Positions 24,500 through 52,776 are shown, numbered from the whole stretch's first letter. The stretch: DNA of 63,673 nt, filler included, from Octopus bimaculoides (GCF_001194135.2; 4 parts of 4 records of this genome joined end to end with filler, not necessarily neighbours in it); one strand, 5' to 3'. Numbers and translations: made by a program. Notes: a model not told the origin generated them from the letters alone.

Positions 24500-24769
24500 N
24501 NNNNNNNNNNNNNNNNNNNNNNNNNNNNNNNNNNNNNNNNNNNAGTCCACTCCCCACCCCCGATTCGTTGGTGCAAATTTTTGTTTTTTTGTATCCATTT
24601 CATACACATTTTTTACCCTTGTTACACTTGTTTGTTTTTGTTGTTTGCTTGCTTTGGTGAGCGAGGGTTAAAGTAAAACTCAACCAAAAGACCAAAAAGA
24701 AACTTGTTTTACAGAAAAGTAAATATTCTTCGCAAAATATAAAAAAAAAGATTTTATGATAGTTATTAA

Positions 24770-24861
24770 GGCGGTGAGATGGCAGAATCGTTAGCATGCC
24801 GGACGAAATGCTTAGCGGTATTTCGTCTGCTGCTACGTTCTGAATTAAAATTCCGCTGAAG
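24770..24861 (+). mobile_element. SINE family 2 head, truncated by deletion
   Basis: GGCGGTGAGATGGCAGAATCGTTAGC with the same 5' flank (AAGATTTTATGATAGTTATTAA) as 29773. Confidence 0.85.
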
Positions 24862-26189
24862 AGTTGTTCTGCTTGACATAAAAGTTTCGTTTCGATGTTC
24901 AAAACAAACTAATACATGTTTTATACATACCCCATTTTTATAGGTTTTTGTCAGGATTACTTCTGCTGCCAGATATTCTTTTATCTCTTGTCTGAAAAAT
25001 AGCGACTTTTCTGGAAGAATTCCTACTTCTGTAATCAAAACTGCAGGGGAAAGGATTCTTTTATAAGATCACGATTGAGATTAAATTGTGAGTAAAGTAA
25101 TAATTCGATCTTATTTTTATATTGAAGTTCGTTTTCTCTTTGTACAAATTTCTTATGATCGGAAATCTTAGAATATTCAAGATTTGTTACATTTTACCCA
25201 TCGTAAATACTATTCTAAACCTGCTGAAATGTGGAAAATTAAGTAACTTACAGAAATACCGTCCAGAGTGTGTATATTACGATTACATCAGAATTTAATA
25301 TGATGAAATACATTTGATGGGTTCACACCCTTACATAACTGACACACGTCACATGTATGGATGGTGGGGCATTTGTTTAAGCATTGCACTCACGTAATTT
25401 ACCATTATTATTATTGATTTCTGAGTTCAAATTCCGCCGAGGTCCACTTTTCTTTTTCCAAATAAAATATAAAAGAACAGTTGTGATTTCTAACCATTTT
25501 TTTTTAGCTTGGGGTACTCTACGACGATCTTTGGGACTACAGCATGGCAGTTTATTAGGAAGCAGCGGAAGAGCTCGACTGAACCAACAATGCTTTTTAC
25601 ATTGATGCTGGGAAGTCGAATGGTCAGGATTAACAGGTTCTACGAAGAGGGTAAAGAGTACAGAAAACACAAAGAGAATATTTCCTTCATCAGCTGCCGC
25701 CATTATGAAAATAAGTGTTTATATATATATATATATATATATATATATATATATATAAACACAAGTGTATGTCTTTGTGTTAGTGTTTCTTCCCGTACCC
25801 CCCATTCTCACTTAACAAATGGTGTTGGCACATTTACATCCATATGAGTTTCAGGCATAACAAAAAATAAGTACACAAACAGTTGTGGTGCTTCCTTTGT
25901 TGCAGATGTATTTCGTCAGGTGACTTGTCGAAAGTAACTCATATTTTAATTTCTGTTTTGCTTATTTCAATTTGAATACATTTTGGTAGTTGGTATATGT
26001 GAAACTTCTTTTAGTTTCCATCTATGAAATTCTTACCCAAGGCTTTCATTGGCCACTCTGAGACTGAACCCAGAACCATGGGGTTGGTAAGCAAAATTTT
26101 TACCACACAACCATGCCTGGTCATGTCTGTATAAAAACGTAGTAAAACTTTCACTGTTTTAATCTCTCTAATAATCTCGTATGTTTGAC

Positions 26190-26213
26190 ACTGTTGTTTC
26201 TCTTTCATTTCAG
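26190..26213 (+). promoter_or_regulatory. 3' splice acceptor of ZNF-A terminal exon
   Basis: CTGTTGTTTCTCTTTCATTTCAG|ATTATCAGATGAC, conserved in four paralogues. Confidence 0.8.
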
Positions 26214-26440
26214 ATTATCAGATGACCTCTGCATCACAGAATTTTTATATAAGCTACATCATTCGTATTGAAAGTATTTTAAAGTCTGAGCGAGGATGTT
26301 ATTTATAACACGCATAACGTTGATTCTATAAATATATACAGAATTATTGCAAAATATATCTTCTGAACTGACATATGTAGCAAAATTTCTCTTCTTTATT
26401 GTCTGGAATACACAGAAAATTATATTTGTATTTGAATTAA

Positions 26441-26600
26441 TCCTTTAACATTTCATCTGGGCATATCAATCCCAAATATTCTACGCATTCTATGTTAAAA
26501 TTGCCCACATCTCGCCTTTCACACACACCCTACATTGTCATTCTAAAAATAAACAATCACATCATTGAAATCTGAACATGATAAGATAATGAATGATTAT
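26441..26600. mobile_element. piggyBac-type MITE (family B), partial, in ZNF-A 5' UTR
   Basis: TTAA|TCCTTTAACATTT end; reverse complement of 37893-38112. Confidence 0.7.
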
Positions 26601-26738
26601 TAATATGGCAGTTGCCAGCATCTTCAAATATTAACAAAGATTATTATTGATGGAGATATATCAGTAGAAATATTTGTTAAGAGCAATATCCAAAAGGAAG
26701 GAAAATATTTGTGTACTGTCACAAGAGAAAGGAAGATT

Positions 26739-50350: not shown

Positions 50351-50390
50351 ATATCTATATCTCTATTTAAGCATCCTTTTTACCTAAAAC

Positions 50391-50415
50391 TGTTGTTTCT
50401 CTTTTTTTATTTTAG
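50391..50415 (+). promoter_or_regulatory. 3' splice acceptor of ZNF-F
   Basis: TGTTGTTTCTCTTTTTTTATTTTAG|ATTATCCGATGAC. Confidence 0.75.
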
Positions 50416-50504
50416 ATTATCCGATGACATTGCCACCCAAGACCTGATACTTCATCAATATTTCTCATCTTTTTCTGACTAAGAAAACTAAAGGAAAATA
50501 TACA

Positions 50505-50593
50505 AAAAAGTTAGTTTACTAAATTCTTTGTTGTATTTAAAATTAACTGAAAGAAACACAGAGCATCTCAACAGAAATATGGCAACAAAAGGG
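50505..50593. mobile_element. piggyBac-type MITE end (family C) in ZNF-F 5' UTR
   Basis: ...GAAATATGGCAACAAAAGGG|TTAA = TIR CCCTTTTGTTGCC next to TTAA; other end not seen. Confidence 0.55.
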
Positions 50594-50634
50594 TTAAATT
50601 AAATGCTGACACTTTTACACAAAAACAAGTTCAC

Positions 50635-51428
50635 AATTTCTTCGGATATTGCCAATGATTGCAATTGATGAAAATACAGCTGTGAAGAAAGAATAATTTG
50701 TTAAGAATAAAATGTGAAAATGCAAATAAGTAAATATTATTTCTGAATGAAGATAGATAACAGCATTTCTCTTCAATGAAGTAAAAATTGCTTCTGAATT
50801 AAAATTAATTTTTTTTTTTTTTTCTTTGCTTTCCACAATCATTAAAAGTTGATTTAAACTCAGACAAATTTTATTAATTAGTTTGTGTAGCATCTTTGGA
50901 CATTGACCAAACTCACAGTTGTTGTTAGGATTAAAACAAAAGAAAAAAAACAGAAAGAAGACAAATATCTTTATACACTGTGGTGAAAGAAGAAAAGTTA
51001 TGGAAAATGGATTTTGTGAGGACAAAGTTGACTGTTTGTGTAGAATCTTCGATTATTGACAACGATTTCAATTGATGGAAATATAGCTGTGAAGGAAAAA
51101 TAATATGTAAAAATACAAACTAGTAAATATTATTTTAAATTATGATAAATAACAGCTATTCTCTTCAGACAAGTAATATAACACCTGAATTAAAATTAAT
51201 AACGTTTTCCTTCTTTTCTCTTCGCAATTTTTTCAAGATGGTTATGCTTTCGAATTAAACTCAGACAAAATTTATTGGTTAATTTTGTGTGACATCTCCA
51301 GATATTGACAAAAATTATAGTTACTAGGATTAAAACAAAAGACAAAACAGAAAGAAGACAGATATTTCTATATACTGTGGTGTAAGAAGAAAAATTATGG
51401 AAAATGAATTTTGTGAGGACAAGGTTGA
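50635..51428 (+). repeat. 397-bp tandem duplication of ZNF-F 5' UTR plus start codon region
   Basis: ATGGAAAATG(G/A)ATTTTGTGAGGACAA at 51000 and 51397 with colinear upstream sequence. Confidence 0.9.
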
Positions 51429-52776
51429 ATGGAAAACACAATCAGAAATAATTGGTCTCCAAGATGTAAAGAAAGAGAAAGAAAAGACATTATATGACTG
51501 TGATGTGTGTGGTAAATTGTTTTCTCAAAAATGGAATCTTACCGCTCATAAACGTGCTCACACAGGAGAAAAACTGTATCACTGTGACGTCTGTGGTGTG
51601 TCAGTATCACGAAATGACCATTTAATTGAACACAAACGTATTCATACTGGAGAGAAACCATTCGATTGTGATACTTGTGGTAAATCATTCTCTGGAAGTA
51701 GTGACCTAACTAAACATAAACGTATTCATACAGGAGAAAAATCATATCAGTGTGATATCTGTGGTAAATCTTTCTCTGAAACTAGTCACTTAACCAAGCA
51801 CACACGTGTCCATACAGGTGAGAAGCCATATCATTGCAACATCTGTGGTAAGTCATTCTCTCAGAATGAACACCTGACTAAACACAAACGCATTCATACC
51901 GGAGAGAAGCCGTATCAGTGTGATATCTGTGGTAAATTATTTACTCAAAGTGGTGACTTAACTGTACATAAACGTACACATACAGGAGAGAAACCATATC
52001 ATTGTGATATCTGTGGGAAATATTTTTCTGATGGTAGTCAGTTTACTAAACACAAGCGTATTCATACAGGAGAGAGGCCGTATTTCTGTGATATCTGTGG
52101 TATGTCATTCGCTCAGAAGGAACATGTAACTAAACACAAACGTGTTCACACAGGAGAGAAGCCATATCAGTGTGATATCTGTGGTAAATCATTCTCGCAA
52201 AGTGGTGACTTAACAATACACAGACGTGTTCACACGGGAGAAAAGCCATATCATTGTGATGTCTGTGGTAAATCTTTCTCCGATCGAAGTCAGTTTACGA
52301 AACACAGACGCATTCATACAGGGGAAAAGCCATATTCCTGTGATATCTGTGGGGCATCATTCTGTCAAAAGGTACACTTAACTAAACACAACCGTATTCA
52401 TACAGGAGAGAAGCCATATCATTGTAATATCTGTGGTAAATCTTTCTCCCAGAGTGGAGACTTAAATATACACAAGCGTATTCATACAGGCGAGAGACCA
52501 TATCACTGTGATGTCTGTGGTAAATCATTCTCTGATGGGAGCCAGTTCACTAAACACAAGCGTATTCATACAGGAGAGAAGCCATATCACTGCAGTGCCT
52601 GTGGTAAATCATTCTCTGAAACTGGCCGCTTGACTAAACACAAATGTATTCATGCAGGAGAGAAGCACCATGACAACAATATCCATGATGTATCGTTCTT
52701 TCAGGGAAATTCTGTAGCTACTTACAAATACATTGAAGGAGAAGAGGCACCATATCACTCATCATCATCGTTTTAA
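51397..52776 (+). CDS. C2H2 zinc-finger protein F, 459 aa, 14 fingers plus degenerate 15th
   Basis: Leader MENEFCEDKVEWK homologous to A/B; TGEKP-linked fingers. Confidence 0.95.
   Translation: MENEFCEDKVEWKTQSEIIGLQDVKKEKEKTLYDCDVCGKLFSQKWNLTAHKRAHTGEKLYHCDVCGVSVSRNDHLIEHKRIHTGEKPFDCDTCGKSFSGSSDLTKHKRIHTGEKSYQCDICGKSFSETSHLTKHTRVHTGEKPYHCNICGKSFSQNEHLTKHKRIHTGEKPYQCDICGKLFTQSGDLTVHKRTHTGEKPYHCDICGKYFSDGSQFTKHKRIHTGERPYFCDICGMSFAQKEHVTKHKRVHTGEKPYQCDICGKSFSQSGDLTIHRRVHTGEKPYHCDVCGKSFSDRSQFTKHRRIHTGEKPYSCDICGASFCQKVHLTKHNRIHTGEKPYHCNICGKSFSQSGDLNIHKRIHTGERPYHCDVCGKSFSDGSQFTKHKRIHTGEKPYHCSACGKSFSETGRLTKHKCIHAGEKHHDNNIHDVSFFQGNSVATYKYIEGEEAPYHSSSSF

What the first reader, a model, noticed from the sequence alone, without database searches (positions are those of the whole stretch)
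24748..52776. Six-gene KRAB-less C2H2 cluster evolving by modular finger exchange
Seen: A, B, C, D, F descend from one cassette (shared acceptor, leader). B shares its tail fingers, frameshift and 3' flank with A, yet its finger 1 (RKADLVIHQ) and leader end match C, not A. The QNINLTC finger lies before the GNSDVTI finger in A and after it in B. Known: octopus genomes have large clustered C2H2 expansions without KRAB. Inference: fingers behave like minisatellite units exchanged by unequal crossover or conversion (PRDM9/KZFP-like), generating new DNA-binding specificities.
Basis: partly seen in the sequence, partly recalled or inferred. Interest (0 to 1): 0.75.

Follow-up and report, generated by a model that had tools for sequence, protein, structure and literature searches.

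The report
Octopus zinc-finger gene cluster reshuffling
This is an ordinary tandem cluster of octopus zinc-finger (DNA-binding) genes in which one old 21-finger gene has stayed almost unchanged between two octopus species, while its duplicated neighbours have lost, duplicated and moved whole fingers and changed their DNA-reading residues.

Summary
The piece is Octopus bimaculoides chromosome CM046629.1. It holds six C2H2 poly-zinc-finger ORFs with no other Pfam domain. No assembly gap touches an ORF. The cluster extends beyond the piece: a 21-finger gene "Z" lies upstream and an 18-finger gene "G" downstream.

A, B and C (and Z) share a cassette of about 5 kb: flanks, an acidic leader starting MENELY, and an 84-nt finger array. 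A, B and Z also share a -1 frameshift tail. D and F are older, more decayed members. The QNINLTC finger (80/84 nt identical in A and B) lies before GNSDVTI in A and after it in B.

An O. sinensis ortholog of Z changes the reading. It has the same frameshift, and 20 of its 21 fingers are colinear with Z, with only 3 of 80 contact residues changed. So the B/Z finger order is ancestral and A is rearranged. B's "C-like" first finger is the ancestral state; A's is the derived one. A and B have changed about 28-30% of contact residues on matched fingers, against 0-2% in Z, but there is no proof of dN/dS above 1. Cassette A is a mosaic of Z-like flanks and a B-like array (p = 7e-4).

This is the known mode of zinc-finger cluster evolution, not PRDM9-like instability. 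The unit order rests on a short-read assembly.

The parts
24748..26738 (+). Upstream flank of cassette A
   Evidence: Homologous to the flanks of B, C and Z at 85-96%. The far-upstream part is Z-like: 95.7% to Z against 86% to B.
26739..26840 (+). Gene A leader ([34 protein letters not shown])
   Evidence: Aligns with the leaders of B, C, Z, F and of O. sinensis and O. vulgaris genes. No Pfam match. Has a 3-nt deletion unique to A.
26841..28187 (+). Gene A array: 16 finger units of 84 nt plus the stop. A14 has lost its first zinc-binding His (His to Asn).
27681..27848 (+). A11 (QNGNLTC) and A12 (QNINLTC): a tandem pair, 95% identical, lying before the GIDY/GNSD fingers
   Evidence: A12 vs B13 80/84 nt. 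A12 and B13 share 4 derived sites against Z18/S18.
27933..28016 (+). A14, the GNSDVTI finger
   Evidence: Ortholog of B12, Z17 and S17. NJ bootstrap 0.80 for the clade A14, B12, Z17.
28188..28385 (+). Two out-of-frame pseudo-fingers after the shared -1 frameshift and stop of A
   Evidence: Alignments with Z, B and S.
28411..29023 (+). 3' flank of cassette A
   Evidence: 90-98% identical to 33769-34475. Also 80% to O. sinensis and O. vulgaris flanks.
29342..31651 (+). Upstream flank of cassette B. It has a B-specific insertion of about 750 nt (29865-30616) and a deletion of about 340 nt next to the leader.
   Evidence: The B far-upstream branch is as long as the O. sinensis branch.
31652..33019 (+). 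Gene B: leader plus 15 fingers and the stop. B4-B5 and B6-B7 are a 2-finger tandem duplication.
   Evidence: B3 matches O. sinensis S1 at 89%.
32681..32848 (+). B12 (GNSDVTI) followed by B13 (QNINLTC): the ancestral order
   Evidence: The same order is seen in Z (17, 18) and in O. sinensis S (17, 18).
33020..33214 (+). Pseudo-fingers after B's frameshift and stop, cut by gap 2
33769..34475 (+). 3' flank of cassette B, beyond gap 2
37135..37747 (-). Gene C, a likely pseudogene. It has a +1 frameshift in the leader and 3.5 fingers, then breaks into a second, truncated leader copy (ATG at 37351).
37748..39208 (-). Upstream flank of the inverted cassette C
   Evidence: 88-96% identical to A's flank.
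41535..41712 (+). Decayed cassette upstream region and leader of D (ATG changed to AAG)
   Evidence: Local alignment z = 7.6 against A and 10.5 against F.
41713..42882 (+). Gene D: 13 fingers with a new short N-terminus
42883..43281 (+). About 5 decayed, frameshifted fingers after D's stop
45982..47142 (-). Gene E: 12 fingers, an unrelated leader and irregular finger spacing. It belongs to a different subfamily.
51397..52776 (+). Gene F: a diverged leader plus 14 fingers with a 3-finger (252-nt) higher-order repeat

Best explanation
This is a lineage-specific tandem cluster of C2H2 poly-zinc-finger genes in Octopus bimaculoides, with at least 8 ORFs in about 46 kb. In the gene calls seen, each coding sequence runs from the leader ATG to the stop in one piece: a short acidic leader followed by 12-21 fingers of exactly 84 nt. 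No KRAB, SCAN, BTB or SET domain is present.

One subfamily (Z, A, B, C) arose by segmental duplication of a cassette of about 5 kb. The copies lie in tandem, one of them inverted.

The parental copy Z is an old gene. Its 21-finger array, its frameshifted end and nearly all of its DNA-contact residues are conserved in O. sinensis. It therefore has a fixed DNA target under purifying selection.

The daughter copies diverged in three ways:
(i) In-register loss, tandem duplication and, in A, transposition of whole fingers. I infer unequal recombination or slippage between 84-nt units as the cause.
(ii) Patchy gene conversion or recombination between neighbouring cassettes, which made A a mosaic of Z-like flanks and a B-like array.
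(iii) Amino-acid replacements concentrated at helix positions -1, 2, 3 and 6, while the finger scaffold stayed constrained.

The result is a set of paralogs with different predicted DNA specificities (A, B), plus dead fragments (C) and a truncated copy (D).

Shown: the anatomy, orthology, colinearity, incongruence and rate asymmetry. Inferred: the recombination mechanism, the DNA-binding role, and any link to transposon control.
For: - Identity and extent of the cluster.
- Only C2H2 Pfam families; nothing in the leader or the intergenic ORFs tested.
- Shared cassette flanks.
- Shared frameshift tail in Z, A, B and in O. sinensis S.
- 84-nt period with 168- and 252-nt higher-order repeats.
- Fingers cluster by type across genes, not by gene.
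- Z2-21 are colinear with S2-21 at 90-98% nt.
- Between Z and S, contact pN/pS is 0.07 and scaffold pN/pS is 0.19; 3 of 80 contact residues differ.
- Against S on matched fingers, A differs at 13/44 and B at 11/40 contact residues, while Z differs at 1/44 and 0/40 (p = 7e-4 and 4e-4).
- Branch-polarised counts: A has 10 contact replacements and Z has 0 (p = 0.003). Scaffold omega on the A and B branches is 0.31 and 0.20, so both have been constrained as coding genes.
- Quartet incongruence between the array body and the far-upstream flank, p = 7.5e-4.
- Clumped identity between Z and A, permutation p = 6e-4.
- A-B anchors are colinear in 7 of 8, with a single transposition.
Against: - Unit order in A, B and Z comes from a short-read shotgun assembly scaffolded with Hi-C (PMC9068888). 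Exact repeats of 40-66 nt span finger junctions, including the A12/A13 junction, so a chimeric assembly of A is not excluded.
- Assigning A12/B13 to the Z18/S18 type rests on few sites: 8 vs 4 in the Z18-vs-Z15 vote (p = 0.39), the shared QNI codons, and 4 shared derived sites.
- Synonymous change is also higher on the A and B branches than on Z (15 vs 8; 23 vs 4). So the A/B lineage may be older than the species split, and part of the 'acceleration' may simply be time.
- No dN/dS above 1 is significant (contact N vs S on the A branch, p = 0.46).
- Finger pairs chosen by similarity are not independent.
- There are no expression or binding data.
Confidence: 0.75

Rival explanations
1. The fingers form a hyper-mutable coding minisatellite, like PRDM9. 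Modules are swapped between genes, so that B is a chimera with C's head and A's tail, driven by positive selection for new specificities.
For: - Whole-unit changes and block duplications occur.
- The QNINLTC finger sits in three different contexts: after finger 1 in C, after GNSD in B, and before GIDY in A.
- Contact-residue change is elevated in A and B.
- The cassette shows conflicting trees along its length.
Against: - Z and its O. sinensis ortholog keep 20 fingers in identical order, with 3 of 80 contact changes. The array is therefore not intrinsically unstable.
- B's finger 1 and leader end match Z as well as C. A is the outlier (6 private sites against 2-3 in the others), so no exchange is needed.
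- Contact pN/pS is 0.63-0.66 across paralog finger pairs and is not significantly above 1 on any branch.
Confidence: 0.15
2. Assembly artefact. The odd finger order in A, and part of the A/Z/B mosaic, come from mis-threading near-identical 84-nt units, or from mixing reads of paralogs, in the short-read assembly.
For: - The assembly is an earlier shotgun assembly plus Hi-C, and there are many N gaps.
- Exact repeats of 55-66 nt link A5/A6, A12/A13 and Z6/Z7.
Against: - The repeats are shorter than what I recall as typical Illumina read lengths (not checked here).
- A's flanks differ from Z by 4-8% and from B by 6-22%, so A is a distinct locus.
- Z's order is independently confirmed by the gap-free O. 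sinensis locus.
- The ORFs are intact, and A-B anchors are colinear in 7 of 8.
Confidence: 0.1
3. Differential loss only. A long ancestral array carried QNI-type fingers on both sides of GIDY-GNSD. A and B simply kept different ones, so there was no transposition or conversion.
For: - The ancestor was longer than any living copy, at least 23 units: B keeps B2 and B3, and B3 matches S1 at 89%.
- Every array shows unit deletions.
Against: - Both Z and S have RNGTLIL (T15) before GIDY, and only one QNI finger.
- A keeps its T15 ortholog at A9.
- A12 and B13 are as similar (95%) as clearly orthologous tail fingers, and they share 4 derived sites.
- Loss alone does not explain the incongruence between flanks and array body.
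Confidence: 0.12
4. A and B are decaying pseudogenes, or alleles (haplotigs) of one locus, and their differences are neutral noise.
For: - C is clearly broken and D is truncated.
- A14 has lost a zinc ligand.
- The tail carries an old frameshift.
Against: - Scaffold pN/pS on the A and B branches is 0.31 and 0.20, and the ORFs are long and intact.
- The frameshift is conserved in O. sinensis, so it marks the normal end of the gene.
- A and B have different insertions and deletions in their flanks, differ by 6-22% in non-coding DNA, and sit beside two further copies. This is far above the allelic divergence I recall for this species (about 0.1%; the paper was not readable here).
Confidence: 0.05

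Closest known systems
Cephalopod (octopus-specific) C2H2 zinc-finger expansions (Albertin et al. 2015; PMC9068888; PMC12513265)
   Same: Same species and the same gene class: tandem clusters of many-finger C2H2 genes, with lineage-specific duplicates.
   Different: In the parts I read, those papers work at the gene-family, expression and chromosome level. I found no finger-by-finger history, no Z/O. sinensis colinearity and no contact-residue asymmetry in them.
Mammalian KRAB zinc-finger (KZFP) gene clusters
   Same: Tandem segmental duplication, arrays with an 84-nt period and TGEKPY linkers, finger gain and loss in paralogs, faster change at contact residues, and conserved old members beside fast young ones. 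Emerson & Thomas 2009 and Nowick 2011 are cited in PMC10547256.
   Different: No KRAB or any other Pfam effector domain. The coding sequence seems to lie in one piece starting at a short acidic leader. Positive selection is not demonstrated here.
PRDM9 zinc-finger coding minisatellite
   Same: 84-nt finger repeats that can change by whole units. Contact positions are the variable ones (PMC3890296).
   Different: No PR/SET, KRAB or SSXRD domain. Fingers within an array are only about 63-95% identical, so they are not homogenised. The parental array is stable between species. Allelic hypervariability was not tested.
FiNZ zinc-finger genes of cyprinid fish (PMC10547256)
   Same: A lineage-restricted poly-ZNF family defined by a short conserved N-terminal sequence rather than KRAB, and tandemly expanded.
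   Different: The octopus leader is unrelated and only about 35 residues long. Its constraint is weak (pN/pS about 0.67, few sites). It was found only in Octopus proteins. No repression or transposon-binding data exist.

Membership tests
C2H2 poly-zinc-finger proteins (Krueppel type) | Tandem C-x2-C-x12-H-x3-H fingers that match Pfam zf-C2H2 / zf-H2C2_2 | tested here: met
   All six ORFs score E = 5e-22 to 9e-88 for PF00096. There are 71 regex-perfect fingers inside the ORFs.
C2H2 poly-zinc-finger proteins (Krueppel type) | Conserved TGEKPY-type linker and a 28-residue (84-nt) period | tested here: met
   The spacing is 28 residues throughout A, B, C, D, F, Z, G and S. Only E is irregular.
KRAB-ZFP family | N-terminal KRAB domain (PF01352) | tested here: not met
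   No KRAB hit in any ORF, in the leader, or in the 9 intergenic ORFs tested. An unannotated upstream exon cannot be ruled out without RNA data.
KRAB-ZFP family | Positive selection (omega above 1) at contact residues of young paralogs | tested here: inconclusive
   Contact replacement is raised 2-3 fold over the scaffold, and to 10 and 8 replacements on the A and B branches against none on Z. However, pN/pS is 0.45-0.78 pairwise. The branch estimate of 2.6 rests on 10 replacements and 1 synonymous change (p = 0.46).
PRDM9-type coding minisatellite | PR/SET methyltransferase domain upstream of the array | tested here: not met
   No PF00856 or PF21549 hit.
PRDM9-type coding minisatellite | Rapid turnover of finger number and order between close species or alleles | tested here: not met
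   Z and its O. sinensis ortholog have 20 of 21 units in the same order. Turnover is seen only in the duplicated copies. Allelic variation is not testable with these tools.
Tandem segmental-duplication gene cluster (birth-and-death evolution with conversion) | Paralogs share non-coding flanks, not only coding sequence | tested here: met
   1.4-2 kb of upstream flank and 0.6-0.7 kb of downstream flank are shared at 85-98%.
Tandem segmental-duplication gene cluster (birth-and-death evolution with conversion) | Trees from different segments of the unit disagree (conversion or recombination) | tested here: met
   Array body: SZ|AB 15, SB|ZA 2. Far-upstream flank: 2 and 8. Fisher p = 7.5e-4. Longest identical run between Z and A, permutation p = 6e-4.
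Tandem segmental-duplication gene cluster (birth-and-death evolution with conversion) | Presence of dead or truncated members | tested here: met
   C has a frameshifted leader and breaks off after 3.5 fingers. D has lost its start codon and carries about 5 frameshifted fingers after its stop.

The most novel reading that the evidence does not exclude
The acidic leader MENEL(Y/F)..E(S/P)EE(I/L)DF.DEE, together with the finger-derived relic just upstream of it, may define an Octopus-specific class of zinc-finger genes. In that reading the leader is the effector or partner-binding motif, as KRAB or FiNZ is elsewhere. The finger relic would give homology for array-to-leader recombination. Such recombination could fuse, truncate or restart genes, as seen independently in C and in an O. 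vulgaris copy. That would be a built-in way to re-deal finger modules among tandem paralogs.
Probability: 0.15. Interest if true: 0.55.

Novelty: new member of a known kind. Interest (0 to 1): 0.3.

Why it matters
Octopus genomes carry well over a thousand C2H2 genes of unknown function. This locus gives a clean worked example of how they diversify. One 21-finger gene has kept its DNA-reading residues across species, so it has a real conserved target worth finding. Its tandem copies have been re-cut and re-coded. The same rules described for vertebrate KRAB zinc-finger clusters therefore seem to operate in a mollusc without KRAB. The conserved Z/S pair and its altered daughters A and B are natural candidates for binding-site comparisons. 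The finding does not reveal a new mechanism.

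Tried and rejected
- Whole-protein homology search with A. It was swamped by vertebrate zinc-finger proteins and gave no help with origin.
- Exact-sequence cluster look-up. Names are hidden for the window's own proteins; only C's 201-aa ORF was on record.
- Leader search by word index. It gave two O. vulgaris fragments. These led to loci L003 and L004, which carry the same cassette but mostly non-orthologous fingers: only the T1 and T2 types reach 85-90%. They could not serve for comparing finger order.
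- Leader profile search against 1.84 billion representative proteins. It gave two hits, and one of them led to the decisive O. sinensis locus L005.
- Voting tests to assign A12/B13 to one Z finger type. Underpowered: 8 vs 4, p = 0.39.
- Quartet counts in the pseudo-finger region using O. sinensis. Discarded, because S diverges there after about 45 nt past its stop, possibly through an insertion.
- Synteny check of the L005 flanks against the octopus window. Only repeats and generic zinc-finger similarity were found.
- tRNA scan. Nothing found.
- Albertin 2015 could not be opened, so the heterozygosity figure is from memory.
- I considered and rejected calling the leader a domain. It has no Pfam hit, and its pN/pS of about 0.67 is indistinguishable from that of the upstream non-ATG region (0.53).

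Full report
WHERE IT IS AND WHETHER THE GAPS MATTER

Exact look-up of two ORF products places the piece on Octopus bimaculoides GCA_001194135.2, chromosome record CM046629.1. Window coordinate w corresponds to record position w + 1,186,199. GC content is 35%.

The four N runs are all intergenic. The closest one starts 196 nt after B's stop codon, so no reading frame or finger array crosses a gap. Across gap 2, the sequence to the left aligns with paralog A up to about 28378. The sequence to the right realigns from about 28412, on the same strand. About 70 nt of the right-hand contig does not match A. Order and orientation therefore agree with the paralog, but the true gap content is unknown.

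The assembly is an older shotgun assembly scaffolded with Hi-C (PMC9068888, section 14). That matters for repeat order, as discussed below.

WHAT IS THERE

There are six ORFs made of C2H2 fingers:
- A, 26739-28187 (+), 16 units. One unit, A14, has lost its first zinc-binding His.
- B, 31652-33019 (+), 15 units.
- C, 37135-37747 (-), 3.5 units.
- D, 41713-42882 (+), 13 units.
- E, 45982-47142 (-), 12 units.
- F, 51397-52776 (+), 14 units.

Pfam finds only C2H2-type families. It finds nothing in the leader or in nine intergenic ORFs. 'KRAB-less' therefore holds as far as it can be tested without transcripts.

The flanking DNA fetched from the same record shows that the cluster is larger than six genes. 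A 21-finger gene, here called Z (L001 4419-6290), lies 5.6 kb upstream of A and has the same leader and tail. An 18-finger gene G lies downstream of F.

(1) One cassette. A, B, C and Z share 1.4-2 kb of upstream flank at 85-96% identity and the leader MENELY…[14 protein letters not shown] and B also share 0.6-0.7 kb of 3' flank at 90-98%. C is an inverted copy. F shares the leader at about 70% identity. D retains a decayed copy of the upstream region and leader start in which the ATG has become AAG; it aligns at z = 7.6 against A and 10.5 against F, relative to shuffled sequence. E has an unrelated leader.

(2) Tail. Z, A and B share the last fingers and a 1-nt deletion that turns HTGEKPY into HTREV..*. 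They also share two recognisable pseudo-fingers after the stop.

(3) Finger 1. B1 is 90% identical to C1 and 83% to A1. A alone has a 3-nt deletion at the leader end.

(4) Order. A12 and B13 (both QNINLTC) are 80/84 nt identical, and 42/42 across the recognition helix. This ties for the highest identity among all 240 A x B finger pairs. The GNSDVTI finger is A14 in A and B12 in B. Among eight reciprocal-best A-B anchors, seven are colinear, and this pair is the single inversion of order.

The observations are real. The 'shared acceptor' cannot be tested here. The database gene calls on the O. bimaculoides record begin at the leader ATG, and the gene call for an O. vulgaris relative begins at its leader ATG. 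The roughly 45 codons upstream of the ATG do stay open in frame in several copies.

THE DECISIVE COMPARISON

A profile of the leader, searched against 1.84 billion representative proteins, found only two proteins. One of them maps to O. sinensis GCA_006345805.1, locus L005, which contains no N. That locus carries a single ORF, here called S (ATG 10001 to 11869). S has the same leader, 21 fingers and the same frameshifted end, HTKEVTSL*.

Fingers Z2-Z21 match S2-S21 one to one and in the same order, at 90-98% nucleotide identity. Only the first unit differs. S1 is the type that B keeps as B3 (89% identity), so the common ancestor had at least 23 units. Z later lost two units and S lost two others.

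Three conclusions follow:
- The order GIDY - G(N/D)SD - QNI(K/N) seen in Z, S and B is ancestral, and A is the rearranged copy.
- The frameshift is the normal, conserved end of the gene and is not a recent lesion.
- A long finger array of this kind is not intrinsically unstable.

SELECTION

Between Z and S, where orthology is defined by position and is therefore free of pairing bias, only 3 of 80 contact residues (helix positions -1, 2, 3, 6) differ. Contact pN/pS is 0.07, scaffold pN/pS is 0.19, and pS is about 0.19-0.22.

On matched fingers, A differs from S at 13 of 44 contact residues and B at 11 of 40. Z differs at 1 of 44 and 0 of 40 (p = 7e-4 and 4e-4).

Changes were polarised using S as the outgroup. 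This gives 10 contact replacements on the A branch and 8 on the B branch, against none on Z (p = 0.003 and 0.02). Scaffold omega on the A and B branches is 0.31 and 0.20.

Across 36-40 paralogous finger pairs, contact pN is about twice the scaffold pN (odds ratio 2.2, p = 6e-5), but contact pN/pS is 0.63-0.66.

So A and B have been kept as coding genes while their DNA-reading residues were largely released or re-selected. An excess over the neutral rate is not demonstrated. Synonymous change is also higher on the A and B branches. The A/B lineage may therefore be older than the species split, and part of the asymmetry may reflect time rather than rate.

UNIT DYNAMICS AND EXCHANGE

All arrays except E keep a strict 84-nt period. 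There is a 2-finger tandem duplication in B (B4-5/B6-7, 93-94%), a single-finger duplication in A (A11/A12, 95%), older block duplications inside Z, and a 3-finger higher-order repeat in F.

In a bootstrap NJ tree of 82 units, fingers group by type across Z, A and B rather than by gene. Arrays are therefore not homogenised.

Relative to Z and S, B is colinear, with deletions, one duplication and two retained ancestral units. A carries the QNI-type finger, in duplicate, ahead of GIDY-GNSD, and has none after them. Every scenario I could construct needs at least two or three unit-scale events on A's lineage.

Quartets of S, Z, A and B show conflict along the cassette. The leader, proximal flank and six finger types give SZ|AB 15, SB|ZA 2 and SA|ZB 3. 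The far-upstream flank gives 2, 8 and 1. Fisher's test gives p = 7.5e-4. Mismatches between Z and A are clumped: the longest identical run is 189 nt (permutation p = 6e-4). A16 is 84/84 identical to Z21.

Cassette A is therefore a mosaic, with Z-like flanks and 3' end around a B-like array. The simplest explanation is gene conversion or unequal recombination between neighbouring copies.

Z, B and C share the finger-1 state. A has 6 private sites against 2-3 in each of the others, and it is also the most divergent copy in the leader.

DEAD AND DAMAGED MEMBERS

C has a +1 frameshift in its leader. After 3.5 fingers it breaks into a second, truncated leader copy. D has lost its start codon and most of its leader, and carries about five frameshifted fingers after its stop.

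CAVEAT ON ASSEMBLY

Exact repeats of 40-66 nt span finger junctions. One 55-nt repeat is shared by the A5/A6, A12/A13 and Z6/Z7 junctions. With short reads, a mis-threaded path cannot be excluded for A's order. Z's order is confirmed independently by the O. sinensis locus. I recall the O. sinensis assembly as PacBio-based; that was not checked here.

COMPARISON WITH WHAT IS KNOWN

Large clustered C2H2 expansions in octopus are established (PMC9068888; PMC12513265). Wells et al. predicted that octopus zinc-finger proteins bind transposons (PMC10547256). Finger gain and loss, and fast contact residues, in young paralogs are the textbook picture for KRAB zinc-finger clusters (Emerson & Thomas 2009, as cited). 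The coding-minisatellite picture belongs to PRDM9.

This locus works like a KZFP cluster but is not a member of that family, since no KRAB domain is present. It is not PRDM9-like in stability or in domain content.

I file it as a new member of a known kind. Its modest added value is the finger-level history and the contrast between the parent gene and its daughters.

VERDICT

Novelty and interest are low to moderate.

Noticed in passing
window 30438-30549 (-): A 5S rRNA-like element (Rfam RF00001, 49.7 bits, above the gathering score). It lies inside an insertion of about 750 nt found only in B's upstream flank (29865-30616). It is probably a 5S-derived SINE or a pseudogene.
   Followed up: partly
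window 38798-39208, 29342-29625; partial copies at 45427-45594, 41049-41161, 49795-49891, 50002-50087; at least 4 copies in L005: An interspersed repeat of about 410 nt, shared with O. sinensis, that sits at the borders of the duplicated cassettes. It could have mediated the segmental duplications.
   Followed up: partly
window about 26610-26738 (and the same position in Z, C, L003, L004, L005): The roughly 45 codons upstream of the leader ATG stay open in frame in most copies. They read like a decayed finger with an internal deletion (H.QI.T…DGDISVEIF…EGK.LC). The leader therefore seems to be flanked by finger-derived sequence on both sides. Where the coding sequence really starts is unresolved.
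   Followed up: partly
window about 37351-37420 (-); L004 about 8816-8900 (-); protein P0125: Independent 'finger runs into leader' junctions in O. bimaculoides (C) and in O. vulgaris. In O. vulgaris the finger CDISGKSF continues in frame into VKSNIREEGK…MENEL, exactly where the upstream finger relic aligns with a finger. This suggests recombination between a finger array and the 5' end of a cassette.
   Followed up: partly
L003 and L004 (O. vulgaris OX597842.1): The same cassette (upstream flank, leader and 3' flank at 80-90%) is tandemly repeated about every 8.8 kb, with reverse-transcriptase-like ORFs between the copies. Their fingers are mostly of other types ([11 protein letters not shown]…).
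   Followed up: partly
window 51919-52653: Gene F contains a 3-finger higher-order repeat (QSGDL.. / D.SQFTK / QK.H.TK), present three to four times with a 252-nt period and 80% matches.
   Followed up: partly
window 36686-36811 / 36853-36978 and 43372-43641 / 43818-44087: Two local direct repeats of 126 nt and 270 nt, 96-97% identical, of unknown nature. They lie in the intergenic DNA next to C and D.
   Followed up: no
L005 1-2892 (-) and 22176-23642 (+): In O. sinensis the Z ortholog appears as a single copy within 23.6 kb. It sits between an unrelated zinc-finger gene and a sulfatase gene. No A- or B-like copy lies within 10 kb.
   Followed up: partly
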